Positions 1 to 64,000 of a stretch of 64,000 nt of DNA are shown piece by piece. Location: the IMG/VR virus record IMGVR_UViG_3300030108_006260, positions 124,001-188,000 of that record. The stretch is one strand, 5' to 3'. The position numbers and the translations under genes were made by a program. Each line of letters starts with the position of its first letter. The first letter of the stretch is position 1. Below the pieces are notes generated by a model, which made no database searches, had not been told where the DNA came from, and saw only the letters and a list, made by a program, of their open reading frames with translations.

Positions 1-3000
1 GACCCCATCGTACACCAAAGTCGTAATCAATTTCCATGGGGACAATCATGTCAATACCGAATTCCTCTTTAAGGAAAGAAGGAACTTGGTCTACCATCTT
101 TTCCTGGAGAACGGATACTACCTCCTGAACCATGTCAAAGTCCATAGGAACTTCCATTGTGATAGCATCATGAACGCAGTTAATAATCTTATAGGGTCGA
201 TCATTTCTCTCTATCCAGTCCTGGATGGCCCAGGCACACAAAGCGGTAGTATCACTACTCACTGCCTGTATGGGACTGTTACGTGCTCTTCTCTTAGCTC
301 CATTCTCGTCCTGTTCAAACAGGTCTCTCAAGTGCCTAACTCTACCCATAGGAGTAGAAACGAACCCCATAGACTCAGCTTCTCGTTCGATGTCACTAAG
401 CCACTGGCCTGCTCTCTCAAATTCATTAACGAAGGTACCCTGTAGCTTTAGGGCTTCGTCGGGTGTAATGCCCAGAAGAGAAGCCAGGGTCTTAAAGTGC
501 TGACCATAGATAGATCCGAAACACAAACTCTTTGCCCTCTTACGTTCATCCCCCGTTACATCATAAACAGACTTCTGAAACATGATCGAGGCCACCTTCT
601 TATGTATATCGGCCTCTGCTTTTACTCGATTACCTAGTTCTTCGTCCCCTGTAAGTTTATATTCGTCACGAAGATTTTTCATTTCGTGGAACAACCGGGC
701 ATACTGAGTGTCACCCGCAAGCTGAGCCCACCAACGAACCTCTGCCTGACCAAAGTCGCACTCTACAAGGATATGTCCAGGCGAAGCGCCATAAATAGAC
801 CTAATAGCTGCTTTGGCGTTGTTACCCTTTCCCTTGGGGAGCTGCTGGAGGTTTGGGTCCGAAGAATTGTGCACTACAATTCCATCTACAAGGAATGACC
901 TAGTAGCAGGAACCTCTAGGTCGTACACCTTCTGTGCTCCCAACGATTCCACTCTAATGATTTCAAATGACTTCGAATTTGATTCTAACGCCCAGTGAAC
1001 AAATTCAGCGGACTCGCCGTGCTCTGGCCCAACTGCCGAAGTTACTAGGGACTGTACCTTCCTGGTGATCCTAGCCGTCTTTCTGTTTCGGGCTTTATGT
1101 AATCTATGATAATCAGGTGAGGAGCACCCTTTTCTTCCGATCAAGTTATGATGAATCTTAACAGGCTTCCAAAATGAGTCAAAGTCAAACCAGGAGGGCT
1201 TGAATACACCAAGGTGAATGGAATGCTTACGAATCTGATCTCTTTTTAGAGAGGACCAAAAAAGCCATGAAAGATCTTGGTCATTAGATACCAACACTGA
1301 GTACTTCGTACTGTTACGGTCGGGCCTCTTACTACTGGATATAGAATGGTGAATTCCCAAGCTAGAAAGGAGCAAACCTACTCCCTCTGCAAGTTGCCTG
1401 CTCTCGGTAGAAAGTCTAGGATCTCCAGATGAAGACCCCGCGTCCCCTTCAAATAGACCCTTCAAAAAGGATCGTCTCTCAGACAAACCAGAAGAGAAAA
1501 CAGATTCAGGAACTAAAGCATTCCTAGACTTGTACCCAAAACCGTTCTCGACTAGCCAACGAGATAAATCAACAGAACTACATTCCAGGGTAGGGGAACC
1601 GTTCTCGTAGTAAGAAAACTCTACCCCAAAGACTTCCTTCCACTCTGACGTGAGAAAATCTCTCAGGGGTTTTTCATCCCATCCCAGGGCAATGATAACC
1701 TTAGATGGAACCTTTCCCTTCCTGTTAGGTTCTTTCTTTGTTGGTCGTAGATTGTTGTATCCTATACACCCCTCAGCAACAAAGTGTCCGAGAAGGAATG
1801 CAACTCTGCTGTCCATAGTGGAGGGGAAGGTAGGAGTGTTGGATCGTCCTACAATAGTAGAAGGGGGTGATAGAGTAGAATGATTTGATACATCAGGTCC
1901 CTCTCTACCAGAAATGTAGAGGTCGTCACCCTCTTTCAGGTTCTGTGCCTCCGTCCACTTTCCATCTGAGAATACACGATGAAGGGGTGAACATCGGAGC
2001 TTTTTCCCGTTAGATAAAGTGAATTCAAGTATTTCTTTAGTTCCAGCTTCCCAAGCAGACTTAACTTCTTGAATCCCACGATCAGTTTGTATCAGATCCC
2101 CAGGAACTACCTTTTCAATAGGAACGAGACCAGAGTCCGTAGCTATTCTTGTTCCAGCAGGAAGACAAGCCAAGCGCCCCGTTACTGTGCGAGTAGCATG
2201 GAATCTTGCGTGTATCTTACCGTCTTGTTTGTTATCTGGTTTGGATACCAATATGTCGCTAACAGAGTCCAGGTACGAAGAGATCAGCTTATCTAGACCC
2301 GTATACTCCTTGTATAGAGAAACTACCGGATGTTTCTTGTAATGGTCAAGGTAGGCTTTATCAATCTGAGGCTCGTCCGTCTTCTTTGAAAAAGATATAG
2401 GCTCCAGTCCGCAAGCATCTACAAACAAACGAAGCTTGTGCTCCTTTTTACGGAGGGAGAAAACCCATGGCTTCTTTCCAAAAAGAGGAGTCATCCCTGC
2501 TGTCTTACTGTCCTTCTCAAGAAGGATCTCATTCGCTTTCTTGGCCTCTTCGGAAGCCTTTATTAAACCAGGTATCTCATTGTACCTTGAAATAATAGGA
2601 GAATCTTCTGACTTTAGATAGGACAACTGATCTACATCAGTAGCAAACCCATTTATGCTCATCTTCGTAAGAAGATGAAAAATACGGCTATAAAACTTTT
2701 TAGCGAAAGGAACAGCTGAAGAGTACCCCTGCCTCTCTAGCCAGAGTCGGTAGAAGTCGAAGATCCTTCTCGTGATGTAGGCGTCTGTTCCTCCGTATTC
2801 AGAAAGACGGTCGAGAGAAAGATTCCAAAGGCTACCACCAGAGGCGCCAGAACGAGCAGCAATGGCATCAGATAACTCCGTATCATATGTATAAAAACCA
2901 AGAAGCTCACGTGCCAAAGTTTTAAGTGCAAAACTGGTGAATACTGCGGACTTCTTGCCTCCGTCATCATCACCACACTGATTCTCGTCCTGTAGGTAGG

Positions 3001-4009
3001 CCAAGAACATCGTGTCAACTACTGGCTTTGCGATCTTTTTTAGCTTAAGGAAGTTGAATGTGATACCTCCATCGAACTGCGCGTTGTGCATCAGCCAGAA
3101 AGGTATCTTTGTCTTTCTACTTCCCAGGAGGCGTCTAAGACGCTTCCTTACGTGTCTAAGTTCTTCTTTAGACCAAGGGGACTCCCAGTGCTGAAGAGGA
3201 ATAACGTGTGCTTTATCGTTTGAAGCAGAAAACTGGATAGTAGCTACACGGTTCCGCGCAACATGATTTAGGTTTTCTGTCTCATAGTCGAGGGACACAT
3301 ATGTATCGCAGTCCTGCTCATACCAGTCCATCAACTCATTGAATCTGTCCAGATCCAATATTGTCTCAATTTCTCCTTTAGCAGAGAAAGAGGTAGTCTT
3401 ACCGGAAGCGAACCTTCCTGCTGACCTCATGTGCCTATAGAAGCGTCTCCTCTGCGTGGCAGACTCGCTTCTTAGGTAGGTAGAGGGAGGAAGCGTAACA
3501 AGATGGGTACGCCCGCTTTTAGTGATGTAAGCGTGCCCTCGTAGAGATCCTACGTTTACTTTTTCCCATTCTGGGTTCTCGTTCAAAACCCTTAGTGTAG
3601 TGTTGCCCATCATAACGACAACTTTTGGGTTAAGGGCCTCTATGTCCTGCTTGATATAGTTAGAACATGCGGAAATCTCTTCTGTGGTAGGAGGCCTGTT
3701 AGACCCGTCATCAGCCACAGGACGACAACGTACTAGATTTGCCAGTGCGTAGGACCCATCACTACCAGCTCTCTTTAAAGCAGAGAATATTTCCTTGCCA
3801 CTAGACCCTGCGAATGGCATACCTAGAACATCCTCTGTCCTACTGGGCATGTCACCTATGACCATAACGTCTACTTCGGGTGTTTTCTCGTCAGGACCTA
3901 CCCTATCATAAACAACGTCAGTAGGTATGTACTGTTTTCGTACACGCTTTGATCTGTATAGGGGGCAGGCACTACAAAAGTCCTGGTCTTGATAGAGAGT
4001 GAGTCTCAT
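1..4009 (-). CDS. polA: Family A DNA polymerase with N-terminal family-4 UDG-like (Fe-S) domain, 3'-5' exonuclease and an intein; 3' end runs off the window
   Basis: Not in the ORF track. Hand translation from the ATG at 4009 stays open to position 1. UDG-like part: FCSACPLY, VIGDMPSRTEDVLGMPFAGSSG, NLVRCRP, EEISACS. Exonuclease motifs: SLDYETEN, HNAQFD, YGGTDA. Polymerase motifs: TVTGRLA/SSDPNLQQLP, motif A VECDFGQAEVR, motif B RKRAKSLCFGSIYG, motif C NCVHDAI. Confidence 0.95.
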   Translation of the reverse strand, partial: MRLTLYQDQDFCSACPLYRSKRVRKQYIPTDVVYDRVGPDEKTPEVDVMVIGDMPSRTEDVLGMPFAGSSGKEIFSALKRAGSDGSYALANLVRCRPVADDGSNRPPTTEEISACSNYIKQDIEALNPKVVVMMGNTTLRVLNENPEWEKVNVGSLRGHAYITKSGRTHLVTLPPSTYLRSESATQRRRFYRHMRSAGRFASGKTTSFSAKGEIETILDLDRFNELMDWYEQDCDTYVSLDYETENLNHVARNRVATIQFSASNDKAHVIPLQHWESPWSKEELRHVRKRLRRLLGSRKTKIPFWLMHNAQFDGGITFNFLKLKKIAKPVVDTMFLAYLQDENQCGDDDGGKKSAVFTSFALKTLARELLGFYTYDTELSDAIAARSGASGGSLWNLSLDRLSEYGGTDAYITRRIFDFYRLWLERQGYSSAVPFAKKFYSRIFHLLTKMSINGFATDVDQLSYLKSEDSPIISRYNEIPGLIKASEEAKKANEILLEKDSKTAGMTPLFGKKPWVFSLRKKEHKLRLFVDACGLEPISFSKKTDEPQIDKAYLDHYKKHPVVSLYKEYTGLDKLISSYLDSVSDILVSKPDNKQDGKIHARFHATRTVTGRLACLPAGTRIATDSGLVPIEKVVPGDLIQTDRGIQEVKSAWEAGTKEILEFTLSNGKKLRCSPLHRVFSDGKWTEAQNLKEGDDLYISGREGPDVSNHSTLSPPSTIVGRSNTPTFPSTMDSRVAFLLGHFVAEGCIGYNNLRPTKKEPNRKGKVPSKVIIALGWDEKPLRDFLTSEWKEVFGVEFSYYENGSPTLECSSVDLSRWLVENGFGYKSRNALVPESVFSSGLSERRSFLKGLFEGDAGSSSGDPRLSTESRQLAEGVGLLLSSLGIHHSISSSKRPDRNSTKYSVLVSNDQDLSWLFWSSLKRDQIRKHSIHLGVFKPSWFDFDSFWKPVKIHHNLIGRKGCSSPDYHRLHKARNRKTARITRKVQSLVTSAVGPEHGESAEFVHWALESNSKSFEIIRVESLGAQKVYDLEVPATRSFLVDGIVVHNSSDPNLQQLPKGKGNNAKAAIRSIYGASPGHILVECDFGQAEVRWWAQLAGDTQYARLFHEMKNLRDEYKLTGDEELGNRVKAEADIHKKVASIMFQKSVYDVTGDERKRAKSLCFGSIYGQHFKTLASLLGITPDEALKLQGTFVNEFERAGQWLSDIEREAESMGFVSTPMGRVRHLRDLFEQDENGAKRRARNSPIQAVSSDTTALCAWAIQDWIERNDRPYKIINCVHDAITMEVPMDFDMVQEVVSVLQEKMVDQVPSFLKEEFGIDMIVPMEIDYDFGVRWG
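866..2167 (-). mobile_element. Intein (434 aa) with LAGLIDADG homing endonuclease inside polA
   Basis: In-frame insertion between TGRLA and SSDPNLQQ. It begins CLPAGTRIATDSGLVPIEKV, has block B CSPLH, LAGLIDADG-like LLGHFVAEG and FLKGLFEGDAG, and ends VYDLEVPATRSFLVDGIVVHN followed by Ser(+1). Confidence 0.95.
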
Positions 4010-4027
4010 CTATAAGTGATTTACAAT

Positions 4028-4396
4028 CTAAACTTCAAGAAGAACCGTGCGTAGGTATCCGACCTTTACTGCACGATGAGGAAGTAGGGCGTTAAACTTT
4101 TCCAGACGAGAAGGGTCAGAAAAAACAGCCATGAGTTTTGCTTCCAAGTCTATGAGAAGCTTAGAAAAGCTTCCACGACAAGAAAGGCTAGGAAGGTAGG
4201 AAGACACAGAAAGACCCCCTCCTGTTCCCAAGGGAGCAGACAGGTAAAGTCTTCCTCCCGCTCCTATACGGACACCAGCCTCGTTTCCCAAGGCTTCCAG
4301 TCGGGTACAGATGCTTCTTTGTGGTGTTCTTGACGAGCCAGAGGACCTAGAAATGCTAGGCTTTGTGCCTCTGCTGCCTCTACAATTACATCCCAT
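4028..4396 (-). CDS. Hypothetical protein (122 aa, MGCNC N-terminus)
   Basis: ORF fills the gap between the SNF2 and polA genes and abuts the upstream stop. Confidence 0.6.
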   Translation of the reverse strand: MGCNCRGSRGTKPSISRSSGSSRTPQRSICTRLEALGNEAGVRIGAGGRLYLSAPLGTGGGLSVSSYLPSLSCRGSFSKLLIDLEAKLMAVFSDPSRLEKFNALLPHRAVKVGYLRTVLLEV

Positions 4397-7300
4397 TTAT
4401 TCCTCTGAGTAGGCGTCTAGAATAGACCTTCGATACTCAGGGTACTCTTTACACATTGCAGCTACTTTACGCATCGCAGCTACTTCTTTTTTAGGCCAAA
4501 TCTGGTCTAGAGACAGGCCGAACTTTGCTATCTGCTGCTCAAAAGCGTCCGGATCTTCAAGGTAATAACGCCAGATGTAAAGCCTTTTAGCGAATTTCTT
4601 TATGCTTGAGGCTGCCTCCGTTCGGGTCTGTCCCATGTACAGCCACGTCTGAGATGAATCCCACGATTTGAATCCATGGTCCTTTAGTACAGACAGGACT
4701 CTTTCTTGAAGTCCATCCAGAGTGAAAGAAGCATCAGATATAGTAAAGCAAGGTCTCTGGGCTACCTGACTTCCACTTATAGCCCCGAGTACAGAGACTT
4801 CTAACTGGATAGGAACCCCTCCTGACAAATCCGTGTCTGTTACGCCAGGAATAGGACTGTCTTCTTTTTCGGTAGTAACTTCATTATCAACGGGGGCACT
4901 AGGAGAAGTGTTGGGCCCATCTAGCTGCTGAACAAGGATACCTTTGTGGGCTCTTATCATTGCAAAATGACGTGAGTTTTTCCAAAGCCAGGAAATGTCA
5001 AGGTCATCAGCGTCTAAGTCCAGGTACCCAAAGATCTTAGCAGCAGCAAGAGCATGTATGGGAGTAATTTTCTTTCCACCCGCTTCATGAGCTGCTCTTT
5101 GGAGAAGAGCAAGTGATATCTGACGGTCCTCTTGAGAGGGTTGGTACCCTAGTACTTCCTTACTGTACGTAGGGCTTGTGGGCCTGAAGTCAGAAGGAGG
5201 TGCCGCAGCAGATTTAACTAAGTTCCCGTAGTCAATAGTAGATCCTGGGAATGAGGGATCTACAGGAGCCTGGCCGTAAATCTTAGGAAGTATCTCCTGG
5301 GCGTTTACTATACGTAACGGGTGCTGTGGATGGTTCTGGATGGACTTAAGTATGTTTATTGCTTCTGCTGCGGTGGAGAAGCCTTTGTAGAAGAACCGGG
5401 TATTTGTAGTGAGTGAAAACCCTGACAGTACTCTCTTCATCTGTGGATCAAACTTGAGAGCCAGCCAGAAAGCGGAGTTGAAGTAGATAAATACAGGATT
5501 GATTAGCTGTGTTGCATACCTAGTAGGATCAATGACCCAAGGACTTAAATCCTCGTCAGAAGAAACATAGGGGGTCTCTATCTGCTCACTTCCCTCTATT
5601 TCTTCGCCTGTGGCCAATTCCTTGCTTTCGCTTCCAAAGATCTGGGGAGCTTTCTTGGCTTCTTCGATTTCCTGTTCTTGGATGCGAGAATACACATCCT
5701 GGTACACTGACATCTGTTCGAAGGTATTCTTAGTCTGCATGTTCCTGAGACTCATACCTACAAGAGGAAATGACCGCTCAGCAGTAAAGTCGCTAGTAAG
5801 CTGACGAATCTTGTGCATCTTGGACACCATTCTCATGTACTTTGTCACCTCTGCGGTGCCTTCGGTTAGAATGAGGTCTACATGAACAACTGAGAACCTG
5901 GCAGCGTCTGGGTCGCGAGGAGGAAGACGGTAGGCTCTAGCAATAGTCTGCTCGTAGTCACCGGGGTTCCATGGAAGATCTACACGAATAATCCTATTTG
6001 CCATTTGAAGGTTCTGACCTTCTCTAATGGACTGTTCTACGGCAACAATAATCTTAACATTATCATCTTGCTTGAACTTATCAAGGTTCTTCGACTGAGA
6101 GGAGTCGTAATAAACAGCAGAAGATGCCATGTTCATATTATCAAGTATATGAGAAGCAACTTCTTTGTACTGAGTAAATATTATAACTTTTCCGTTGGAT
6201 GGATCTGAGAAGTGGGAGTCTAAGATATCGTTTATCACTCCTACTTTCGGGCTTACTTTATCCCTATCATCAAATAGGAATGTTTGACCATACTCATCTG
6301 ACTGAGGATTGTTTAGGAACTTATCGACAGCAATAAACTTCTGTAAGAGTGGAAGAAAATCTTCCTCCTCCGAATCGGTAGCCTCGAACTTTTCCAGACC
6401 ACGCCTAATGCGCTCCTGTGCGGCTGCGAGTGCCTTCTTTTTGTTCTCATCCTGAAGGTCGTATCTTATCTCGACCATCTCGTCTTCTCCCTCATCGTAC
6501 TCTACTACAGTGGCAGAAGAAGGAGGTTGCCATGAATCGAGCTGCGCACGTGCCACTGGGTTTGACGCATTAGCATCTCTAAGTTCTCTCTGAAGGGAAA
6601 GTCCTACCGATCCGTAAGCAGCGTCACCTAGCAGCTCCTCGTGTATGATTCTGTCCATGAGGCGTTCATAAACTACCTTTTGAGGTGCTGTTAGTTTAGC
6701 CTGGTGGTACTCTACCTGAAGCTGTGGAAGCTGACCAAGCCAAGCTGACCTACGGATAGCAAGTCCGGCAGACTTGTTTATCCTGTTCCTAATCTGCTTA
6801 ATGGCGCCAGGCTTGAACTCTTCCACACGGCCGGATTTCCTCTTACCTGAGGACTGGGACAAGGCGTACTTCTCAAGGAAAGATTTCCTGTCTCCCAGCA
6901 CAGAGGGGTCCAGGAAGTTCATCTGCAAAAAGATGTCATCGGGACCAGAAGGAGCGGAGGTTCCCGTATAGCACCTTTTGAATGGTACCAGCCTGGACAT
7001 CTGCATAATAGCCTGAGCCTTCTTAGACTGTTTACCAGACGACCCAATACGAACATTGTGGGACTCATCTAAGACAAGCATGTCCACACCTGCCCATGTC
7101 GTAAGCCACGATGCTCTACGGAAAGTAGTTCCCGACCCTGTTTCTACCTGGTCCTCAGATCCTCCACGTATCCAAGAATAGCTTGTAAGTATAATAGTGT
7201 TAGGAGGAGCAGACTGTAGAAGCTTCTTTATCTCATTTAGTCCCTTAAGAGAGTCTCCTACACCTTTCCTAGGAAGACCTGTTCTCTTTGAGACAGCACT

Positions 7301-8467
7301 CGGATCCATCTGCCGAACGGTGTCTGTGTTTATAACAACAAAGTTTACTCCGCCTCGGGTCCACTCTTCCATTTCTCTCTTCTGTTGAGACAACAGAGCA
7401 TTAGGCATAACGATACAAGGGCGTCGTACCAGACCTCTTCCTAACTTGTCTAGAACGTCGGAAAGCATCATGAGTGTCTTTCCTGCTCCTGGATCAGCAT
7501 CGATCATAGCAGCCTTCTTTTCCTTTAGGAAAGAAAGTGCATATGCCTGATGAGGAAGAAACTGTACGTCAGAGCTGATGTGCGGTATCTCGGGAGCTTC
7601 ATCACTATCAACGGAAAGTGACTCATCCTCTGCTGCCTTTTGTTCCTTGTAGTACTCCGCATGTTTATCGGAAAGAAGAACAGCTGCAACAAGGTTTGCG
7701 TAGTTAGAACTAAGCTGTGAGGTCTTTCCCCCACGAGAGTGGACGGGGAGAACACCACGAGATATTTTGTCCTCTATCTTAAGAAGCTCTGTGTCAACCC
7801 ATGACCTGAAATCAGGGTTCCTGCTGTACATGAATAGAGGTATTCCTCCGTCGCGAGACAAATCGACAGAGGATATAGACTTGATCTTCTCTCTACGAGC
7901 GGATGCCTCTGGAGAGTTGTCAGAAGAGTCTACGTGGAACATCTGCTCTAAAGGAGATGGGTCCCATTTCTTCTCTTCTCCAGAGACTGTGCGGAAGGAC
8001 GACGGAGCGTTTACCTTTGAGTCTAAGGTGTGGACAATCATACCAGTATTCTCAGAGAGCTGAGACACGTGGCCAATATTATGAGTGTCCAGGTAGCCTG
8101 ACTTGTCTATGAAGTAGATAGTTCCGTAGTCAATGTCAGTGTAAATTATCTGGTTTCGTACAGACCGTTCCTCTATGGTAGACTCTACTTCTACCAGTGA
8201 CTCTCCAGTAGAAGGGTCTGTCTTTGTTCCTATAGGAAATGTGGCTGTAGTTCTAGGGTTAACCATGCCTTCAGATGGGTGAGGAGGCACGGGAGTCTTG
8301 ATCTTATAACCAGAGAAGTCTACTTTGGAAGAGTTGTTAGCTTGGCTCTTTAGAGAATGAAGGTCAATAGAAAGCTGGGACAGCAAGTCCACCCTAGGTA
8401 TGTATAGAACTGTACCATAGGATCCTATAAAAAGACGGTCTAGCTTGTATTTTGATTTAATATCCAT
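4397..8467 (-). CDS. SNF2/SWI2-family helicase/translocase with long N- and C-terminal extensions
   Basis: Walker A DADPGAGKT, Walker B LVLDESH, motif III YTGT, helicase-C motifs KVIIFTQY, REGQNLQMANRII, LPWNPGDYEQTIARAYR. Confidence 0.9.
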   Translation of the reverse strand: MDIKSKYKLDRLFIGSYGTVLYIPRVDLLSQLSIDLHSLKSQANNSSKVDFSGYKIKTPVPPHPSEGMVNPRTTATFPIGTKTDPSTGESLVEVESTIEERSVRNQIIYTDIDYGTIYFIDKSGYLDTHNIGHVSQLSENTGMIVHTLDSKVNAPSSFRTVSGEEKKWDPSPLEQMFHVDSSDNSPEASARREKIKSISSVDLSRDGGIPLFMYSRNPDFRSWVDTELLKIEDKISRGVLPVHSRGGKTSQLSSNYANLVAAVLLSDKHAEYYKEQKAAEDESLSVDSDEAPEIPHISSDVQFLPHQAYALSFLKEKKAAMIDADPGAGKTLMMLSDVLDKLGRGLVRRPCIVMPNALLSQQKREMEEWTRGGVNFVVINTDTVRQMDPSAVSKRTGLPRKGVGDSLKGLNEIKKLLQSAPPNTIILTSYSWIRGGSEDQVETGSGTTFRRASWLTTWAGVDMLVLDESHNVRIGSSGKQSKKAQAIMQMSRLVPFKRCYTGTSAPSGPDDIFLQMNFLDPSVLGDRKSFLEKYALSQSSGKRKSGRVEEFKPGAIKQIRNRINKSAGLAIRRSAWLGQLPQLQVEYHQAKLTAPQKVVYERLMDRIIHEELLGDAAYGSVGLSLQRELRDANASNPVARAQLDSWQPPSSATVVEYDEGEDEMVEIRYDLQDENKKKALAAAQERIRRGLEKFEATDSEEEDFLPLLQKFIAVDKFLNNPQSDEYGQTFLFDDRDKVSPKVGVINDILDSHFSDPSNGKVIIFTQYKEVASHILDNMNMASSAVYYDSSQSKNLDKFKQDDNVKIIVAVEQSIREGQNLQMANRIIRVDLPWNPGDYEQTIARAYRLPPRDPDAARFSVVHVDLILTEGTAEVTKYMRMVSKMHKIRQLTSDFTAERSFPLVGMSLRNMQTKNTFEQMSVYQDVYSRIQEQEIEEAKKAPQIFGSESKELATGEEIEGSEQIETPYVSSDEDLSPWVIDPTRYATQLINPVFIYFNSAFWLALKFDPQMKRVLSGFSLTTNTRFFYKGFSTAAEAINILKSIQNHPQHPLRIVNAQEILPKIYGQAPVDPSFPGSTIDYGNLVKSAAAPPSDFRPTSPTYSKEVLGYQPSQEDRQISLALLQRAAHEAGGKKITPIHALAAAKIFGYLDLDADDLDISWLWKNSRHFAMIRAHKGILVQQLDGPNTSPSAPVDNEVTTEKEDSPIPGVTDTDLSGGVPIQLEVSVLGAISGSQVAQRPCFTISDASFTLDGLQERVLSVLKDHGFKSWDSSQTWLYMGQTRTEAASSIKKFAKRLYIWRYYLEDPDAFEQQIAKFGLSLDQIWPKKEVAAMRKVAAMCKEYPEYRRSILDAYSEE

Positions 8468-19249: not shown

Positions 19250-19619
19250 TCTTCTTTTTCTATGAATGTTCCGTCATGGGAAACAAGCGGTTGGTAGTCG
19301 TCATCCAGCACATACTCAGGCGAGTGCAGGGGGTACATGGGGGGGTTGGATCGCTGGGGCTCTTTGGCCTGTTCATCGCCTCGGTCGTCACATCGATCAG
19401 GTTCTCGATGGCCTCCACAGCCGTAGCTCCTGCGGCACTCCAGTGGTAGCACATGGCATAGTAGTCGGAGCTGACGATCATGTAGATGCGTTCGGTGGGG
19501 AAGCGAATCCCCGTACGCTGCAAGACCAACGCTACGAGGTCCTGCGCCACCTCTTCAGCAACAGCGAGGTCAACTGCGGAAGCAGTGTACCCTTCTTTGA
19601 TCTGGAGATCGAACGGCAT
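19246..19619 (-). CDS. Small adhesin-associated protein with a probable -1 frameshift at a C7 run
   Basis: The start ATG overlaps the stop of the LamG gene (TGATG). Frame 0 ends at 19260. The -1 frame after CCCCCCC (19339-19345) reads MYPLHSPEYVLDDDYQPLVSHDGTFIEKED* and its stop overlaps the next ATG. Confidence 0.6.
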
Positions 19620-57606: not shown

Positions 57607-57866
57607 AGAATCATAACCTGAACGTTAGGGGAGTTGATTGACCCTATAGAGTGAGAGACTGATTTTCTTATACATAGCCATGTTTCATTTTTCATAAGTA
57701 AATCACTCTCACCATAGTGAGCCTTTACAATAGGAGAAAACCACCGAATCAAATCATCTACTTTACCTTTGTATATGGAGGCATCTCCGTCGTCCCTCAC
57801 AATAAGAAGGACGTGTTTTCCTTGAGACAAAGCTTTCCATATAATGTTGTATGCGTCGTCAGACAT
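57603..57866 (-). CDS. Hypothetical protein (87 aa)
   Basis: Coupled ORF. Confidence 0.6.
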   Translation of the reverse strand: MSDDAYNIIWKALSQGKHVLLIVRDDGDASIYKGKVDDLIRWFSPIVKAHYGESDLLMKNETWLCIRKSVSHSIGSINSPNVQVMIL

Positions 57867-58893
57867 CTTGGAACGAAAGTAGTAAAGATTCTATTTCTTC
57901 TAGTGCCATATCCATAACAGTACCTTCAGCACCCTGCTGTTTAACTCCATCGATAAGTAGCTGCTTAAGTGATCCGCTCATATCGAGGCTCAGTGAGCTT
58001 AGTGTCTTTTTGACCTCATACTTCACTACGTTTGTAGGAATATCCTCGGAAACCAAATCAGACTTACTGTCTAAAACTAACTTTACGTAAGCGTTTGAAG
58101 GAACACTGTCACCTATTTTAGCTTTGACTAACTGGTTAGTATCAATAGGTATAAACTCAGGGGAGTCGGGGAAGTCAGTATCTACCAGTAGCACACCCTT
58201 AGGCCAATCACTGTCAAATCTAGTCTGGAGAGGACTACCTGGATAATAAGCACACGGACCTACCCTCTGCATCTTATGGATGTCACCTAGGGCCCAGTAT
58301 GTTACATCAAGAGACGGGTCAGGAGGAGACTCTCCCGTATCCATACGATAGTAATCTCCGGTAGAAAGCTTTATCTCTGTCTGAGAGCCACGAATAGTTT
58401 CGTGCGCAACCATAACGAAGTTTTTTGCCCCAGTAGCTATGCTAGACTCATGGAAATCTATAACTGCTTTCCTAGATTCCTCAGGAAAGCATCCCTTATT
58501 GTGAAATAGTAAACAAAAGACAGTGTCATCTATCTGGTGATAAGTAGTACTGTCAACTATTACGGAGTTGGACAACCTCTCATGCTTGCACAACATACTA
58601 AGGTAGTTAAGAGCAGTATAGCCGCTGTGGTCTACCAGATCATGATTGCCAGGAATAACCAGTATGTTGTACCCAGCAGCGTCATAATCAAGTATTTTAC
58701 GCTCTACAAGGTCCCTCTCTTCAGGGGAAGGGTCAGAAACATCAAAAATGTCTCCAGCAATGACCACAGTATTAACTCCTGCGTCTGCTGCTGTATCAAA
58801 AATCTGATCTAGGGCCTCCTCTTGTCTTTCGAGGAAGTTAGGCAAAAACCTAGACCCTCCTATGTGGAGGTCGCCTGTGTGTATGAACTTCAT
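57859..58893 (-). CDS. sbcD: SbcD/Mre11/gp47-like metallophosphoesterase nuclease
   Basis: IHTGDLHIG, IAGDIFD, IPGNHD, VAHET, ALGDIH, YPGSPLQ. Confidence 0.9.
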   Translation of the reverse strand: MKFIHTGDLHIGGSRFLPNFLERQEEALDQIFDTAADAGVNTVVIAGDIFDVSDPSPEERDLVERKILDYDAAGYNILVIPGNHDLVDHSGYTALNYLSMLCKHERLSNSVIVDSTTYHQIDDTVFCLLFHNKGCFPEESRKAVIDFHESSIATGAKNFVMVAHETIRGSQTEIKLSTGDYYRMDTGESPPDPSLDVTYWALGDIHKMQRVGPCAYYPGSPLQTRFDSDWPKGVLLVDTDFPDSPEFIPIDTNQLVKAKIGDSVPSNAYVKLVLDSKSDLVSEDIPTNVVKYEVKKTLSSLSLDMSGSLKQLLIDGVKQQGAEGTVMDMALEEIESLLLSFQDV

Positions 58894-59535
58894 TTATATA
58901 TTAGCTATTATTCTTTCATCCCGAAGATAGTTCAGTATGAGGGCCGACGCCTCTTCTCTTTTTATAAAAGATCTCTGCGTTCGGTCCCCATGTACATGGT
59001 AGCGACCCTCCCTAGACATCCACAGTCTGATATGACTAATACCTACCCTTTCAGTAGATAGTTGTTCTTTAAAGTGAACGAGAACAACAGGGTGTCTCTT
59101 ACATATTAGTACTAGACCAAACCAAGAAGCTACGCCCTCTTCTACCTTAAGACCTTTCTGGTTTATCACTACGAATATACTCTTGCTCTGAATTGCAGCA
59201 AGAACACGGTCATAGGCATGTTCGTCTATGGGTACCACACCTATAGCATCCCCTAAAAATCTGGCTAGTGGAAGAACATACCTGTGCTCCGCCGATAGTA
59301 TCTCTGTAGGGTGAGAAGGGTATGCATCCTGGGGACGGTAAGAGAAAGAGGGCTTCGAGTCTAGACCTATAATGTTAGGGTCGTCATTACCCATTTTAAT
59401 GGGTTTACCGTCAAAACCATACAAAGTAGTTTTGTCTGTCTTAGAAGAGGGGTCGGATCCCATGTACCCCTGGTCTACCATATCAGATGTAACTGAAGGA
59501 GTGCCAGAAAAATCAGGTCTTGTTTTTTCAGTCAT
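58894..59535 (-). CDS. Hypothetical protein (213 aa)
   Basis: Abuts the SbcD start. Confidence 0.65.
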   Translation of the reverse strand: MTEKTRPDFSGTPSVTSDMVDQGYMGSDPSSKTDKTTLYGFDGKPIKMGNDDPNIIGLDSKPSFSYRPQDAYPSHPTEILSAEHRYVLPLARFLGDAIGVVPIDEHAYDRVLAAIQSKSIFVVINQKGLKVEEGVASWFGLVLICKRHPVVLVHFKEQLSTERVGISHIRLWMSREGRYHVHGDRTQRSFIKREEASALILNYLRDERIIANI

Positions 59536-59999
59536 GATAGGCTCATTGAATCTAAGTATGATCTTAGAATTTTTCTAGCGGATTTAAGAGTCCTACACCT
59601 GGAAGTTATAAGCTCTCCGTCTATTTTTAGTGTTACACCAGAAACCCTGGTTCCCTTTGAATCATAGGTAGAACGTAAAGACCCTACCTGATCCCCACAA
59701 ACAAAAATAGTTAGTGGAGCCCACGTACAATAAAGCGAAGAACCCTTAGTTCTAGATTCAAAGTCTGTATATCCGAAGACCATGTAAGATGTTTTACAAA
59801 GGGTAGCTTCCTCTACAGAATCAATATCTTCCTGTAGGTATAGCTTCCAGCCAGAGTCCTTGCTCAAAGCAACAGCAGAAGACCACAATGAAGACTGAAA
59901 TCTTCTAACGTGGACCCCACAACGAGTGGCTCCAAAGTCAATAACACCAGGATTGTCTTCCAAAAAGACAAGGACTTCTGAGGGACAAAAAGAACTCAT
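59532..59999 (-). CDS. Hypothetical protein (155 aa)
   Basis: Coupled ORF. Confidence 0.6.
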   Translation of the reverse strand: MSSFCPSEVLVFLEDNPGVIDFGATRCGVHVRRFQSSLWSSAVALSKDSGWKLYLQEDIDSVEEATLCKTSYMVFGYTDFESRTKGSSLYCTWAPLTIFVCGDQVGSLRSTYDSKGTRVSGVTLKIDGELITSRCRTLKSARKILRSYLDSMSLS

Positions 60000-60002: not shown

Positions 60003-61313
60003 CTACACAGCAGTTACTTCTTTTGCTTTAGTCTTTCTTTTACGCTTAGGGGTGCGATCACTACCCTCATTATCGCTTTCTTCCTCGTCAGAGGAAGAAG
60101 AGGAGTAATCTTTAGAAAAAGAGGAGTCACTAAACTGCTCGAATATGTTTTCCTCATCCTCTGACGCCTCAAGGTCTACCTCATCGTACAGAGATGCCCA
60201 GTCGTTTGCCTTAAAGAACAAGTCAAAAGCTTTACCTGAAATAAGCTGGCTCCTGCACAGCTCACGAAACTCATTTGTGGCAAATAAAGGAAGTATGTCC
60301 TTCTCATAGTGGTTTTTATTGTTCCATTCAAACTCACCAGGAACATCAAGAGATAGAGATCTATATTTTCCTGCCCTTACGAACTGACCAGTCATCTCAA
60401 GATATCCCTTTGTGTCTCGAACCCTCTCAAATCCACGACCAAAAGCTACACAAAGAGTGTCCTTTATATCCAAGAATGGAACAAATTGTTTATTCTTCTT
60501 GGTAGAGATATTGATGAACCGCATTGAACGTCTTCTTTCTTCAAAGACCTTTCCTACAGCACTCATTCTAACCTGAAGATCGGGATAAAACCCTACAGCC
60601 TGTCCTCCCGGCTGGTACTCAGGGTTTCCGAATAACTGACCAGGGTTTAGGCGTAGCTGATTTGTAGCAAACCAGCTAACGTTTTTTCTTCCAAGCTTGG
60701 TCTTGATAAGCGGCATATACTGAGAATGAACCGAAGCGCTTACGGCACGTCTACCATCAGTATCATCTATCTCATATGCCTCTGGCAACATAGCTGCCAA
60801 ACTATCAACAATGAATAGTGCCTGAGGCTTAGGTCTCGATCCGTCCTCATTAGGGTCGTAGTCAGGTAGAGCCCTCAAAAGCCTAGCCATCATTCGATAG
60901 GATGCCTCCCCCGTAGTGGGCTGGAAATAGTTAAAGTACGGGTTCTTTTTACCGTCGTTTGTTCTTATGCGAACACCTATGCTTCGCAGGTACTTAGAGT
61001 CAGCACTTGCTTCATGATCAAAGACAAAAACAGGTACTTTCTCTTCTAAAGCTGATGCGATCAAATGGTAGCTCAAGGTGCTTTTTGCGGATCCCTGAGG
61101 TCCATAAGCAACAGTGAACTTACCCGGAGGAAGACCTCCTCCGGTAATAAGATCCATTATCAAAGATCCCATGGACAATGATCCAGCAACAAAGGATCCA
61201 CGGTCCAAGTTAACAGGGGGATTGTCAAGACCGGGCCCCAGCCTTTCTGCTAAAGCAGCTAGCTCTATGGGGTCACTTACGAACTCTTGTTCTGGTTTTT
61301 TCTTTTTAGCCAT
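60003..61313 (-). CDS. recA: RecA/UvsX recombinase
   Basis: MDLITGGGLPPGK, Walker A YGPQGSAKST, DHE, Walker B FIVDSLAAM, TNQLR, GGQAVGFY. Confidence 0.93.
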   Translation of the reverse strand: MAKKKKPEQEFVSDPIELAALAERLGPGLDNPPVNLDRGSFVAGSLSMGSLIMDLITGGGLPPGKFTVAYGPQGSAKSTLSYHLIASALEEKVPVFVFDHEASADSKYLRSIGVRIRTNDGKKNPYFNYFQPTTGEASYRMMARLLRALPDYDPNEDGSRPKPQALFIVDSLAAMLPEAYEIDDTDGRRAVSASVHSQYMPLIKTKLGRKNVSWFATNQLRLNPGQLFGNPEYQPGGQAVGFYPDLQVRMSAVGKVFEERRRSMRFINISTKKNKQFVPFLDIKDTLCVAFGRGFERVRDTKGYLEMTGQFVRAGKYRSLSLDVPGEFEWNNKNHYEKDILPLFATNEFRELCRSQLISGKAFDLFFKANDWASLYDEVDLEASEDEENIFEQFSDSSFSKDYSSSSSDEEESDNEGSDRTPKRKRKTKAKEVTAV

Positions 61314-61314: not shown

Positions 61315-63027
61315 TTATGATTCTTTTACACTTTCAGAAGGAAGTATTCGGCCCCTACTGTCGAAGCTAACGTCACAGGACCATTTGTTAGAAGGAGAAT
61401 ATGCTCTGGGGTAAGGGTCAACCCAAACCCTAAGTGGTTCATTTGAGGGAGACTTAAATGATGGCCGGAGAAAAGAAGATCTTATCTTTTTCAGGTAAGG
61501 GGAAAACATAGAAAACAAGTAAGAAGAGAAATCCACGTACGATAGTTCTCCAAGAAGTACCCTATCCAACTCCTCTTCTATCTCTGCATGAAAATCAGGG
61601 TCTATAAAATCAGGAAACACCTGTCTAAGAAATGTAACACATGCCTCTCCTTTAGGAGTTATTTGTATCAATCCTCTGGACATGGTCACCATGTCAAACT
61701 CTACTAGGGAATCTAATATAATAGAAACGTTGGACGGCCTTAGAATAAGGGAAGAGTCTAAGAAACCTACGACGTCAGATAGGGACGTACCAAACTTATA
61801 AGGAGTCTTAGTGTGTAGAGAAGACTCTAATATTCCCGTCTCTTCACAAGAAACAGGTATACTAGGTGAGCTAAACAAGAAGCTGCTTACCTTGTGCCAC
61901 CCCGGCTTTACAAGCTCAGTGCTAGTAGCCTCCACAATTAGGTCGCTACCTTCTAAAGGTCTATAGGTACAGATGTTTGTCTGAGTAATACTGGTGACCG
62001 ACTGAGACGCGAGGGCCCTAAACCATATGGAAGCGTATACGGTTCTGAGGTCACCCTTTATGCCTGAGGAAGAAGGAGTGATGGAAGGGTCTAAGGGAAA
62101 TAATCCAAAGTATCTATCGGATGCATCTCCTATGAAGTCAGCACCAGCGGTTTTGGTTATGAAAGACACTCCCTTATCAAAGGACTGAATGGACGTTTCT
62201 TTTGTTTCAAAGTCAGAGTTACCTACCAACTTACGTGTCATGAGAGACTCTAACAGACCTGCACTATATGAAGGAGAAAATCCGTACCTTGATGAAAGGA
62301 ACGAGCATAGAGAAACTAGCCCAAAGCAGGAGGGAGGATCCTCTGCACTCTTTACTTCTTGGTACTCAGGTGTACATGAGGACAATAATTCCATGGCTCT
62401 CTCTGCCTTATCCCTATCAGGGATAGGAGTAGATTCGGCCAAAGCGCCACTCTCAAGCAAAGAGGATATCTGATAGTCCACCGTAGACCTTGATAGTCTG
62501 GTGTTCTTGGCTAAGATAGAAAGAACTACACCGCTGTGTCTTTCCAGGGCAACAGTGCCTATCCTGGAGGAGACTTCTTTAGAGGTCACAACAGAGGATA
62601 GATTCTCAACAAGACGACAAGACAGATAGTATGAAACCAAGGAGGTAGAGACGTCTATATTCTCATAAGAGAGACCAGAAGAAAGGTCTCCCAATTTTAT
62701 TCTGTAGAAGGACGCACCACACTTGTTAGCCATAGATTCTACCCTAGAACTTATGAACTCTCCTAGGGGAGACCTATAAAAAGCTGAGTAGACTTTATCC
62801 CCTTCCGAGAAGGCGGAGGATAATCTAGAAAAAACACTAGAGTTAAGTATGCCTATCTTGGGCAGGAAGGATTTATCCTCTATTTTAAATGGCATTCCAT
62901 CAGAATGTAATCCCTCAAAAACACCATCTGTAGATAAAACAGACCATGAAGAAGGGTCCTCAAAGCGATCTATACAAGAGACTATTAAAGATGCTCTGGA
63001 GATGTTCTCTACTACTATGTAGTTCAC
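61315..63027 (-). CDS. topA: Type IA topoisomerase homologue lacking catalytic residues
   Basis: Colinear TopA motifs: YIVVEN, KVYSA...GEFIS, YASIWFRALASQ, LRPS, ITPKG...FPDFIDPDFHAEIEEELD. The DxDxE triad and the catalytic Tyr-x-Arg are absent. GTG start. Confidence 0.8.
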   Translation of the reverse strand: MNYIVVENISRASLIVSCIDRFEDPSSWSVLSTDGVFEGLHSDGMPFKIEDKSFLPKIGILNSSVFSRLSSAFSEGDKVYSAFYRSPLGEFISSRVESMANKCGASFYRIKLGDLSSGLSYENIDVSTSLVSYYLSCRLVENLSSVVTSKEVSSRIGTVALERHSGVVLSILAKNTRLSRSTVDYQISSLLESGALAESTPIPDRDKAERAMELLSSCTPEYQEVKSAEDPPSCFGLVSLCSFLSSRYGFSPSYSAGLLESLMTRKLVGNSDFETKETSIQSFDKGVSFITKTAGADFIGDASDRYFGLFPLDPSITPSSSGIKGDLRTVYASIWFRALASQSVTSITQTNICTYRPLEGSDLIVEATSTELVKPGWHKVSSFLFSSPSIPVSCEETGILESSLHTKTPYKFGTSLSDVVGFLDSSLILRPSNVSIILDSLVEFDMVTMSRGLIQITPKGEACVTFLRQVFPDFIDPDFHAEIEEELDRVLLGELSYVDFSSYLFSMFSPYLKKIRSSFLRPSFKSPSNEPLRVWVDPYPRAYSPSNKWSCDVSFDSRGRILPSESVKES

Positions 63028-63341
63028 GATACCTCCATAAGAGCCGATTCTGCAATCGAGGACGTAAGAATACCTTCTGACTTGAACTGTAGGTGACCTC
63101 CCCTAAATATACGTAGCTGGGGTACACGGACGCAACTAGTCTCTGGCAAACTGGATCCAAGCTCACTTGCTTCAGTAGACGCTACTAAATATCCAAGACC
63201 TGAAAATCTAGATTCGAACAAACTAAGAAGTGACAAAGACCTAGAACTCATAGAGTCGCCTGGTGTTACTAGTAGTAAAACTAAGGGTGTTTTAAGTCTA
63301 ACCAGAGCTGACGCTGAATCGTAAGTTAATTTGGTGATCAT
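63024..63341 (-). CDS. Thioredoxin-fold protein without CxxC
   Basis: PLVLLLVTPGDSMS at the WCGPC position; cis-Pro loop VPQLRIFRGG...EG; 105 aa. Confidence 0.65.
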   Translation of the reverse strand: MITKLTYDSASALVRLKTPLVLLLVTPGDSMSSRSLSLLSLFESRFSGLGYLVASTEASELGSSLPETSCVRVPQLRIFRGGHLQFKSEGILTSSIAESALMEVS

Positions 63342-63345
63342 AGCA

Positions 63346-63397: not shown

Positions 63398-64000
63398 TTA
63401 CAAATCGTCAAAGTCATCGAAGTCATCGTCGAAGTCGTCATCCATGTCGTCGACGGGAGGACTCTTTTTCTTTGTCTTCTTGGGAGGAGTATCCTCCTCA
63501 TCATCGTCGTCGAAGTCGTCGAAGTCATCATCGTCGTCTTCTTCTACAGGTTCGACCTTTTTAGGCTTTCGCCTCTTAGGTGAAGGAGGAACATCCTCTT
63601 CATCGTCCTCGTCGTCATCGTCCTCGTCGTCATCCTCTGGTTCAGGTTCAGGCTTTTTAGCCTTTCTCTTCTTCTTGGGGGATTTTTTAGCAGGAACGTC
63701 GTCGTCGTCATCATCATCTTCGTCATCAACAGAAACAGATGCCTTCTTCTTACTTGGAAGAACTACCGAAGAGTCAGGGCCCCCAGAAGAGTCCTCTCCT
63801 TCGAAGTAACCGTGGCGACGCAAATCCATTCTAATTTTATCAAGGTCAGGCTCCAGCCAGTACTCGCTGAAGTCAACTACCTCTAGGGACAGTTCGCTCT
63901 CATCAAGAGGAGCCCTATCACCCTTCTGTACTTGCCACTCGATCCCACCTCTCTTTTTAGAGTTCTGCTTCATAAGATGAATGTCGCATCCATTTTTCTT
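63398..64000 (-). CDS. gp32-like single-stranded DNA-binding protein, C-terminal part (5' end outside the window)
   Basis: The frame is open to the window edge (KKNGCDIHLMKQN...WQV...APL.E.EL...DF). Long acidic/basic tail ending DDFDDDFDDFDDL; upstream of the RecA module. Confidence 0.65.
   Translation of the reverse strand, partial: KKNGCDIHLMKQNSKKRGGIEWQVQKGDRAPLDESELSLEVVDFSEYWLEPDLDKIRMDLRRHGYFEGEDSSGGPDSSVVLPSKKKASVSVDDEDDDDDDDVPAKKSPKKKRKAKKPEPEPEDDDEDDDDEDDEEDVPPSPKRRKPKKVEPVEEDDDDDFDDFDDDDEEDTPPKKTKKKSPPVDDMDDDFDDDFDDFDDL

What the first reader, a model, noticed from the sequence alone, without database searches (positions are those of the whole stretch)
1..64000. Candidate system: replication/recombination machinery built from three pseudo-enzymes
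Three separate folds in this phage's DNA-metabolism genes keep their length and structural motifs but lack catalytic residues: Topo IA (no Tyr or acidic triad), thioredoxin (no CxxC) and the UDG domain fused to PolA (no catalytic His). The partner enzymes (RecA, SbcD, PolA, SNF2) look intact. This pattern fits selection for non-catalytic scaffold, clamp or processivity roles better than random decay. No sliding clamp or clamp loader is seen in this window, though they could lie outside it.
Basis: inference. Interest (0 to 1): 0.68.

Follow-up and report, generated by a model that had tools for sequence, protein, structure and literature searches.

The report
Dead topoisomerase–thioredoxin pair in megaphage
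A giant marine phage carries three enzyme look-alikes that lack their catalytic residues, but they are not one system: a thioredoxin-fold protein and a dead topoisomerase IA form an old, conserved gene pair beside the recombination genes, while the dead uracil glycosylase domain on the DNA polymerase is a separate, recent loss of a kind already published.

Summary
All three residue-level observations hold. The 570-aa Topo IA homologue keeps the whole four-domain core but has Asn in place of the catalytic Tyr. It has also lost the DxDxE triad, the YxR Arg, GRVQS and the His of HEAIRP. The 105-aa upstream ORF is predicted with confidence to be a classical thioredoxin fold without CxxC. The PolA UDG domain has GDMPS and PPS in place of GE(A/G)PG and HPS.

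The "three-part system" reading fails. The Trx-fold and Topo-like genes are a translationally coupled pair, conserved in the order SSB–Trx–Topo–RecA–…–SbcD in related 340–424 kb metagenomic phages. Degeneracy is clade-wide, and Tyr is lost in 3 of 9. The UDG loss is lineage-specific: the closest relatives keep Glu and His. Dead UDG on PolA is already described for N4-like PolAs.

PolA has no T7-like thioredoxin-binding insert. A clamp-loader gene lies 32 kb outside the window; no clamp was detected. One relative keeps the Trx-like gene without the Topo-like gene. This phage's Topo-like copy is the fastest-evolving one.

The assembly gap is a scaffolding artefact inside a virion gene. The conserved Trx/dead-Topo IA pair appears undescribed; its function is inferred, not shown.

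The parts
1..4009 (-). UDG-exo-PolA gene. The full ORF is G000:C1:123861-128009, 1382 aa; its C-terminal 46 aa lie outside the window.
   Evidence: Pfam DNA_pol_A 3.7e-59, UDG 1.1e-21, DNA_pol_A_exo1 5e-12. Pol motifs A (DFGQAE), B and C (VHDA) are present.
3443..3883 (-). Family-4 UDG-like domain (residues 43-189). Asp53 stands in motif A (GDMPS) and Pro174 stands where the motif B His should be (PPS). The four Cys are kept.
   Evidence: Alignments to TM0511, Tth UDGA and 9QHS. Comparison with 28 relatives. The catalytic E53 and H178 were defined in solved UDG-PolA structures (PMC13697223).
866..2167 (-). Intein with a LAGLIDADG homing endonuclease (residues 615-1048), inserted at TGRLA|C...HN|SSDPN.
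   Evidence: Pfam Intein_splicing, LAGLIDADG_3 and Hint_2. Intein-free relatives close the site exactly.
4397..8467 (-). SNF2-family helicase, 1356 aa.
   Evidence: Pfam SNF2-rel_dom and Helicase_C. GAGKT and DESH motifs are present.
15014..17166 (-). Virion structural gene interrupted by the N run at 16595-16604. It is not part of the DNA-metabolism set.
   Evidence: A continuous 713-aa ORF in L002, L004 and L005; the flanks overlap by 1 base. PHROG head-decoration/virion protein families.
57859..58893 (-). SbcD/Mre11-like nuclease, 344 aa.
   Evidence: Pfam Metallophos 1e-11. The motifs GDLH, GDIFD, GNHD and GDIH are readable in the translation.
58894..59999 (-). Two conserved ORFs of unknown function (213 aa and 155 aa) between RecA and SbcD.
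   Evidence: Syntenic in L008, L009 and L026 and 33-56% identical. No Pfam or PHROG hit.
60003..61313 (-). RecA/UvsX-like recombinase, 436 aa.
   Evidence: Pfam RecA 1.2e-25. About 30% identical to phage UvsX-like recombinases.
61315..63027 (-). Topo IA-like protein, 570 aa, without catalytic Tyr, DxDxE, YxR Arg or GRVQS. It has a GTG start with a GGAGG Shine-Dalgarno inside the upstream gene.
63024..63341 (-). Thioredoxin-fold protein, 105 aa, without CxxC (Ser32 at the family's single-Cys site). It has the invariant CVRVPQLR loop. Its TGA stop overlaps the GTG start of the Topo-like gene (GTGA).
63398..64000 (-). C-terminal part of an SSB-like protein (full ORF reaches window position 64432, 344 aa) with a very acidic C-terminal tail.
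   Evidence: phrog_15004, single strand DNA binding protein, E 1.2e-21. Syntenic in relatives.

Best explanation
The window holds two unrelated cases of catalytic loss, not one system.

(A) Trx-fold / Topo IA-like pair. This is an old, conserved two-gene module inside the recombination cluster SSB - Trx-fold - Topo IA-like - (small ORF) - RecA - 2 ORFs - SbcD, found in a clade of 340-424 kb environmental megaphages. The Topo IA-like protein keeps the four-domain toroid. The whole clade has lost the Mg2+-binding DxDxE triad, the Arg of YxR, the GRVQS motif and the His of HEAIRP. The Tyr itself is gone in 3 of 9 members, replaced by Asn, Gln or Ala. The protein therefore cannot act as a strand-passage topoisomerase.

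Most likely (inferred) it serves as a non-catalytic DNA-binding scaffold or clamp working with SSB and RecA. The CxxC-less Trx-fold protein, made by coupled translation, would be its adaptor or chaperone, acting through the invariant, basic cis-Pro loop. In this phage the Topo-like copy is the most diverged and fastest-evolving one, yet it is still held open as an ORF.

(B) UDG domain of PolA. It lost its catalytic Glu and His recently in this lineage. The domain is kept because it is built into the polymerase. This is the same situation as already described for N4-like PolAs.

Shown: folds, residues, synteny, distribution. Inferred: any binding or scaffold role.
For: Fold and motif losses.

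Clade: monophyletic at 99% SH-aLRT.

Gene pair: adjacent or overlapping in window, L006, L007, L008, L009, L025, L026 and two contigs without DNA. The junction reads GTGA with GGAGG upstream. The canonical relative P0013 has no called gene directly upstream.

Trx family: 24 members, none with CxxC, with an invariant CVRVPQLR. Thioredoxin fold predicted.

SSB identity.

UDG: relatives keep Glu and His in 17 of 29. The catalytic residues were defined structurally. Dead UDG-PolA is known.

Other topoisomerase: a separate type II topoisomerase A-subunit homologue (GyrA/ParC-like) lies in the record. This gene is the only Topo IA homologue.

Selection: the window branch is 1.75 changes per site, yet all 570 codons stay open. 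That is far too long to stay stop-free by chance (inference). The ORF is intact in 5 assemblies.
Against: No physical interaction was shown; the co-folding job gave no verdict. No expression data were found. The window's Topo-like protein is only 32% identical to that of its nearest genome relative, where 44-46% is seen between more distant pairs. That could mean relaxed constraint. One relative lacks the Topo-like gene altogether. Six of 9 members keep the Tyr, so a residual or altered chemistry in those is not excluded. The AF2 models used alignments that include canonical relatives, so part of the predicted fold is inherited from them.
Confidence: 0.6

Rival explanations
1. First reader's model. 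The three dead folds are one co-selected processivity/scaffold system that stands in for a sliding clamp: the Trx-like protein binds PolA as E. coli thioredoxin binds T7 gp5, the dead UDG adds processivity, and the dead Topo acts as a clamp.
For: All three catalytic losses are real. No clamp was detected in 240 kb. A processivity role for a dead UDG has been proposed in print.
Against: The losses do not co-occur in relatives. The PolA thumb has no thioredoxin-binding insert. The Trx-like gene is translationally coupled to the Topo-like gene, 57 kb from PolA. A clamp loader is encoded. The Topo-like gene is absent from one relative.
Confidence: 0.06
2. In this particular phage the Topo IA-like gene is a relic on its way out. 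It is no longer functional, while the Trx-like protein keeps a job of its own.
For: It has the longest terminal branch but one in its clade (1.75, against 0.43-0.93 for five siblings and 2.19 for P0012). Identity to the closest genome is 32%, against 44-46% among others. Ser content is 17.9%. Extra motifs are lost (GRP->LRP, IRP->LFP). L024 has the Trx-like gene without the Topo-like gene.
Against: A 570-codon ORF with no stop or frameshift after more than one change per site. A strong Shine-Dalgarno and a coupled start. Many structural positions are kept, and the model is confident. The ORF is intact in five independent assemblies.
Confidence: 0.2
3. The clade keeps a non-canonical chemistry. 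Members that retain Tyr but lack the DxDxE triad and the YxR Arg may cleave DNA without rejoining it, acting as a nicking or covalent-adduct enzyme, perhaps against host DNA. The Trx-fold protein would control this activity. The window's Tyr-less copy would then be an inactive derivative.
For: Tyr is kept in 6 of 9 members. In E. coli Topo I, mutations in the D111/D113/E115 triad (and, by the title of reference 70 in that review, Arg-321) impair rejoining and are lethal (PMC7823277).
Against: Tyr is replaced three times by three different residues, which argues that it is not under selection. GRVQS, whose Arg contacts the -4 cytosine needed for cleavage (PMC3467081, listed), is also gone. No assay exists.
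Confidence: 0.1

Closest known systems
Bacterial type IA topoisomerase core (E. coli Topo I 67-kDa N-terminal fragment, T. maritima Topo I)
   Same: Same length and the same four-domain toroid (Foldseek TM 0.70-0.74, about 555 aligned columns). The Toprim Glu is kept. The Pfam Topoisom_bac score is above the cut-off.
   Different: No catalytic Tyr, no DxDxE triad, no YxR Arg, no GRVQS and no His of HEAIRP. There are no C-terminal zinc ribbons. A clade-specific C-terminal motif (FD.KG.I) stands in their place.
T7 gp5 - E. coli thioredoxin processivity pair
   Same: A thioredoxin fold whose redox chemistry is not needed, used in phage DNA metabolism together with a family A polymerase (own knowledge; 1T7P is among the fold matches).
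   Different: Here the Trx-fold protein is phage-encoded, has no CxxC and is coupled to a Topo IA-like gene, not to PolA. The PolA thumb has no thioredoxin-binding insert.
N4-like UDG-PolA (cluster 17 of Czernecki et al. 2023, PMC10201439)
   Same: A family-4 UDG domain fused N-terminally to PolA, with its catalytic residues lost. A structural or processivity role has been proposed.
   Different: N4-like domains have deleted a helix and the His-bearing hairpin. Here the elements are all present and only residues changed (E->D, H->P). By sequence this PolA lies nearer to the SPO1/SP15-like UDG-PolAs, and its nearest relatives keep Glu and His.
SPO1/SP15-like UDG-PolA with active UDG (Missoury et al. 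2026, PMC13697223; PDB 9QHS)
   Same: UDG-exo-pol architecture. The UDG domain matches 9QHS_A (E 1.7e-10).
   Different: The residues called catalytic there (E53, H178) are Asp and Pro here. This PolA also carries an intein.
Thioredoxin-fold proteins without CxxC, such as spliceosomal Dim1/TXNL4A (own knowledge, not tested here)
   Same: A Trx fold used as a protein-binding module without redox chemistry.
   Different: No detectable sequence relation. The family here has its own invariant CVRVPQLR loop and usually a single Cys (C-x-R-S/A).

Membership tests
Type IA topoisomerase | Four-domain toroidal core and a family profile match | tested here: met
   Pfam PF01131 scores 60.7 bits against a cut-off of 35.1. 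AF2 plus Foldseek match the Topo I core at TM 0.70, E 1e-31.
Type IA topoisomerase | Catalytic tyrosine (E. coli Y319, motif ITYxRTDS) | tested here: not met
   Asn270 stands at this position, in LVGNSDFE. The loop 272-277 has low model confidence.
Type IA topoisomerase | Toprim acidic residues (Glu of IVESP; DxDxE triad D111/D113/E115) | tested here: not met
   Glu7 is kept, but the triad reads Y-R-S-P-L. There is no Pfam Toprim hit.
Type IA topoisomerase | Active-site Arg (YxR), GRVQS and the His of HEAIRP | tested here: not met
   These read Asp/Ser, LERHS and YFGLFP.
Thioredoxin | Thioredoxin fold with a cis-Pro loop | tested here: met
   AF2 pLDDT 88.9. Thioredoxins are the top Foldseek matches, TM 0.75-0.81. 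Pro74 is invariant. This rests on a prediction only.
Thioredoxin | CxxC redox motif | tested here: not met
   The site reads S-M-S-S. Relatives have a single Cys (C-x-R-S/A), and none of the 24 has CxxC.
Thioredoxin | Sequence-profile membership (PF00085) | tested here: not met
   No hit at E<=10 in the genome. No Pfam hit at E<=0.1. No PDB sequence hit.
Family 4 uracil-DNA glycosylase | Domain profile and four Fe-S cysteines | tested here: met
   PF03167 scores 77.8 bits. CxxC, the Cys of VRCRP and the Cys of ACSNY are all present.
Family 4 uracil-DNA glycosylase | Catalytic motif A (GE[A/G]PG) and the motif B His (HPS) | tested here: not met
   These read GDMPS and PPS. The residues are defined as E53 and H178 in PMC13697223.
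T7-type thioredoxin-polymerase processivity pair | Thioredoxin-binding insertion at the thumb tip of PolA | tested here: not met
   The thumb aligns with Taq 480-574 with only a 5-residue length difference.
T7-type thioredoxin-polymerase processivity pair | Physical PolA-Trx binding | not tested
Clamp / clamp-loader replisome | AAA+ clamp loader | tested here: met
   G000:C1:90814-91914 (outside the window): PF13177 E 1.2e-35, phrog_5846 E 1e-64.
Clamp / clamp-loader replisome | Sliding clamp (beta, gp45 or PCNA type) | tested here: inconclusive
   No profile hit in 240 kb. The record is about 62% complete, and the parent contig is 340.7 kb. Divergent clamps can escape profile searches.
Intein | Cys1, a C-terminal HN, a +1 Ser/Cys/Thr, a Hint fold and a homing endonuclease | tested here: met
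   C...HN|S at a site that intein-free relatives close exactly. Pfam Intein_splicing and LAGLIDADG_3.

The most novel reading that the evidence does not exclude
The CxxC-less thioredoxin-fold protein and the catalytically degenerate Topo IA toroid form a new kind of recombination or replication-restart accessory complex of megaphages. In it, a topoisomerase scaffold is re-used as a non-cutting DNA clamp or ssDNA gate beside SSB and RecA. Alternatively, in the Tyr-retaining relatives it is a natural cleave-but-not-rejoin enzyme held in check by the Trx-fold partner.
Probability: 0.2. Interest if true: 0.8.

Novelty: new variant of a known kind. Interest (0 to 1): 0.5.

Why it matters
I found no description of a type IA topoisomerase that is conserved without its catalytic tyrosine and metal-binding triad; three full-text searches returned nothing. 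A small clade of such proteins, always sitting beside RecA and SSB and usually coupled to a redox-dead thioredoxin fold, would give a natural test case. The question it addresses is what the Topo IA toroid can do without strand cleavage. It would also add a candidate accessory factor to phage recombination.

The result also sets a limit on the idea. Pseudo-enzymes found near each other in a very divergent phage need not form a system, and here they have different ages and histories. The UDG result adds a second, independent route (point substitutions, repeated in several lineages) to the already published loss of UDG activity in PolA fusions.

Tried and rejected
- **Megablast** of 24 kb against cultured phages found no match.
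- **Related loci.** Pattern-based search for related loci with the Topo-like protein found nothing. The word-index protein search returned only the protein itself. tblastn against phages gave only weak partial hits to ordinary Topo IA genes. Relatives appeared only in the exhaustive HMMER search.
- **ESM Atlas, Trx-like.** The Atlas holds a copy truncated at Met31, with a poor model and no usable hit.
- **Co-folding of Trx-like with Topo-like** gave no verdict (score 0.00). This counts neither for nor against binding.
- **dN/dS within the population.** Six Tara and ENA assemblies are almost identical: 1 variant codon in the Topo-like gene and 0 in the Trx-like gene. There is no statistical power.
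- **RNA evidence.** No run holding the stretch was listed.
- **Is the 361-aa ORF next to the clamp loader a clamp?** No Pfam or PDB sequence hit, Atlas model TM about 0.2 to unrelated folds, and sigma-factor-like feature neighbours. It remains unassigned. The 436-aa neighbour likewise gave nothing.
- **Alternative genetic code** as an explanation for the Ser-rich proteins: not pursued. Conserved motifs in RecA, PolA and SbcD read normally under table 11.
- **Tree.** The careful search did not finish in the time allowed, so the quick IQ-TREE result was used. A sister relation between the window protein and P0005 has only 74% support, so whether their Tyr losses are shared stays open.
Full report
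**Source and layout**

The window is G000:C1:124001-188000 of a 240,443-bp IMG/VR record labelled provirus and estimated 62% complete. The same sequence lies on a 340,737-bp JGI contig and on a 319-kb Tara Oceans scaffold. Near-identical copies occur in dozens of marine assemblies. It has no close cultured relative.

All real genes in the window are on the minus strand. From low to high coordinates they are:
- UDG-exo-PolA with an intein, then an SNF2 helicase (1-8467);
- about 48 kb of virion and tail genes, including baseplate J, tail-fibre-like proteins and a 1495-aa M23-peptidase protein;
- the cluster SbcD - 2 ORFs - RecA - Topo IA-like - Trx-like - SSB (57859-64432).

PolA and the Topo/Trx pair are therefore 57 kb apart, separated by the structural module.

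**The gap**

The N run at 16595-16604 sits in a virion structural gene. Both sides are open reading frame up to the gap edge. Three independent assemblies, 99.6% identical, read through it. The two flanks actually overlap by one base, and the gene is a single 713-aa ORF matching PHROG head-decoration/virion protein families. The gap is a scaffolding artefact and has no bearing on the finding.

**Topo IA-like protein (61315-63027)**

Pfam Topoisom_bac is above its cut-off, but no Toprim model hits. phmmer reaches E. coli, S. mutans and T. maritima Topo I only weakly. The word-index search found only the protein itself.

The exhaustive search found a small set of 572-587-aa relatives at 26-35% identity, followed by ordinary Topo IAs. 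With two more members taken from neighbouring-gene look-ups, the clade has nine full-length members. It is monophyletic at 99% SH-aLRT.

Alignment with canonical enzymes shows the following.
- The Toprim Glu is kept almost everywhere.
- No member of the clade retains an intact DxDxE triad: some keep the first Asp and the Glu, but none has all three acidic positions. The window protein has lost every one of them (Y-R-S-P-L).
- The Arg of ITYxR is Tyr, Phe or Asp/Ser.
- GRVQS is unrecognisable.
- The His of HEAIRP is lost.
- The Tyr is kept in six members and replaced in three by three different residues: Asn in the window protein, Gln in L026 and Ala in P0005.

In E. coli Topo I, Y319 is the nucleophile and the D111/D113/E115 triad binds the Mg2+ needed for religation (PMC7823277). 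R169 of GRVQS contacts the -4 cytosine that directs cleavage (abstract of PMC3467081). A clade without these residues cannot be a conventional topoisomerase. Three different replacements of the Tyr say that the Tyr is no longer under selection.

The AF2 model (pLDDT 87.4) matches the full 67-kDa Topo I core (TM 0.70, E 1e-31). The only poorly modelled internal loops are residues 115-117 and 272-277, the latter next to the missing Tyr.

The record also holds a type II topoisomerase A-subunit homologue (PF00521, E 1e-96) and no second Topo IA.

**Trx-like protein (63024-63341)**

No sequence method recognises it. Public gene calls start it at Met31, giving 75 aa. Residues 1-30, however, align with the relatives, which supports the 105-aa form.

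A profile search gave 24 family members of 99-126 aa, all unannotated. None has CxxC. Most have a single Cys in (D/E)-P-L-C-x-R-(S/A). Four, including the window protein, have Ser there. The loop C-V-R-V-P-Q-L-R is invariant or nearly so.

AF2 on this alignment gives pLDDT 88.9 with the exact secondary-structure order of thioredoxin. Foldseek returns thioredoxins over the whole length, TM 0.75-0.81.

**The pair**

The TGA stop of the Trx-like gene overlaps the GTG start of the Topo-like gene (GTGA), and a GGAGG lies just upstream.

In every one of the nine contigs carrying a degenerate Topo-like gene, a 100-116-aa ORF sits directly upstream, overlapping or abutting it. The order SSB-like - small ORF - Topo-like - (110-120-aa ORF in some) - RecA - two ORFs - SbcD - small ORFs - M23 giant protein is kept in contigs of 392 and 424 kb. 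The closest canonical relative examined (P0013) has no called gene directly upstream.

The most divergent Trx-like member (P0177, L024) sits in SSB - Trx - 117-aa ORF - RecA with no Topo-like gene at all. So the Trx-like protein does not strictly need the Topo-like one, and the Topo-like gene can be absent.

Co-folding of the pair gave no verdict. It is not used as evidence.

**Rates of change**

RecA, SSB and PolA place the L026 phage as the window's nearest relative, at 73, 68 and 68% identity. For the Topo-like protein the same pair is only 32% identical, whereas L026 is 44-46% identical to the more distant L008 and L009 copies. The Trx-like protein behaves normally (46% against 38%).

The window's Topo-like terminal branch is 1.75 changes per site, against 0.43-0.93 for five of its six siblings; only P0012 is longer, at 2.19. 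This phage's copy is therefore evolving unusually fast.

With that many changes, 570 codons would not stay free of stops by chance (inference). So it is still maintained as a protein, under relaxed or altered constraint. Population data carry no signal, because the assemblies are nearly identical.

**UDG domain of PolA**

The domain is a clear family-4 UDG with its four cysteines. Motif A is GDMPS and motif B is PPS. The solved phiLo/YerA41 UDG-PolA structures name E53 and H178 as the catalytic residues (PMC13697223); here they are Asp53 and Pro174.

Among 29 UDG-PolA sequences of this group, the three closest relatives (65-67% identical) and 17 in all keep the His. Twelve have lost it, to Asn, Ser, Ala, Thr or Pro. 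The loss is thus recent here and recurrent elsewhere.

PolAs that keep the His sit on the same contigs as degenerate Topo-like and CxxC-less Trx-like genes: P0181 with L026 on contig 80,412, and P0198 with P0012 on contig 92,817.

A dead UDG fused to PolA is already described for the N4-like cluster, with a suggested processivity role (PMC10201439). This PolA is nearer to SPO1/SP15-like enzymes.

The polymerase motifs are intact, and the intein sits at TGRLA|C...HN|S. The thumb aligns with Taq without a thioredoxin-binding insert.

**Clamp question**

Inside the window there is neither a clamp nor a clamp loader. Outside it, at G000:C1:90814-91914, lies a clear clamp-loader AAA+ protein (PF13177 E 1e-35; phrog_5846 E 1e-64), next to SbcC/Rad50.

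No beta, gp45 or PCNA clamp and no Pol III alpha were detected in 240 kb. The record is incomplete, so absence cannot be claimed. Family A polymerases do not generally use clamps (established knowledge), so the absence would not be remarkable anyway.

**Verdict**

The residue-level observations are confirmed. The idea of one system built from three pseudo-enzymes is not supported. The three losses have different ages and do not co-vary, the T7 analogy lacks its structural prerequisite, a clamp loader exists, and one of the "parts" can be missing in a relative.

What survives, and is the interesting part, is an apparently undescribed gene pair embedded in the recombination cluster of a clade of environmental megaphages: a redox-dead thioredoxin fold coupled to a catalytically degenerate Topo IA. 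Three literature searches found no account of such Topo IA proteins. Its function is inferred only. A non-catalytic DNA-binding or scaffold role with SSB and RecA is the most economical reading. A decaying relic in this particular phage, and an altered cleavage chemistry in Tyr-retaining relatives, remain open.

Noticed in passing
window 866-2167 (-); also L006:333-3026 and L025:1170-3806: PolA carries a 434-aa intein with a LAGLIDADG endonuclease at the TGRL(A/S)|S site. Relatives carry PolA inteins at this site (P0193) or at a second site in motif B (P0192, P0202). In two relatives an intein-bearing gene of about 880-900 aa stands two genes upstream of the Trx-like gene, about where the others have the sigma-factor-like gene.
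   Followed up: partly
window 19619-23269 (-): A 1216-aa Gly/Ala/Thr-rich ORF has about 60% G+C over 4 kb, against about 45% for the rest of the window. It has no Pfam hit and may be a recently acquired tail-fibre or receptor-binding gene.
   Followed up: partly
whole record G000; window 61315-63341: The proteome is serine-rich: 10.2% overall, and 9.3% in PolA against about 5% in relatives. The fast-evolving Topo-like (17.9%) and Trx-like (19%) proteins are extreme. This looks like a lineage-wide drift towards Ser and is unexplained.
   Followed up: partly
window 63024-63341 (-): Public gene calls and the ESM Atlas start this gene at Met31 (75 aa). That removes the first strand-helix-strand of the thioredoxin fold and hides what the protein is.
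   Followed up: yes
G000:C1:88183-91914 (outside the window): SbcC/Rad50 (761 aa, with a zinc hook) and a clamp-loader AAA+ gene lie together about 91 kb from SbcD, which sits beside RecA. SbcC and SbcD are usually adjacent. No clamp was detected.
   Followed up: partly
G000:C1:117041-119209; also 186001-200000: The record also encodes a GyrA/ParC-like topoisomerase II subunit just beyond the low-coordinate edge of the window (encoded downstream of PolA on the minus strand). Beyond the high-coordinate edge it encodes a sigma-70-like factor, a class II ribonucleotide reductase and a DnaG-like primase.
   Followed up: partly
L024:3964-6988: One relative has SSB - Trx-like - 117-aa ORF - RecA with no Topo-like gene. 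Several others have a 110-122-aa ORF (weak DUF3467 match) between the Topo-like gene and RecA, which the window lacks.
   Followed up: partly
protein P0016 (574 aa): A second, separately branching Topo IA homologue also has a degenerate DxD, no GRVQS and no YxR Arg, on a very long branch. It may be an independent case of the same kind of loss. Its genomic context was not examined.
   Followed up: no
window 16595-16604: The scaffold gap has no missing sequence. The flanks overlap by one base in three other assemblies, so the N run splits a 713-aa virion gene into two false ORFs in this record.
   Followed up: yes
whole record: IMG/VR labels the record a provirus cut from a 340.7-kb contig. Yet the same phage occurs almost clonally on long contigs in many Tara Oceans samples, and its relatives are 392-424 kb contigs. 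A free megaphage genome seems more likely than an integrated one.
   Followed up: no
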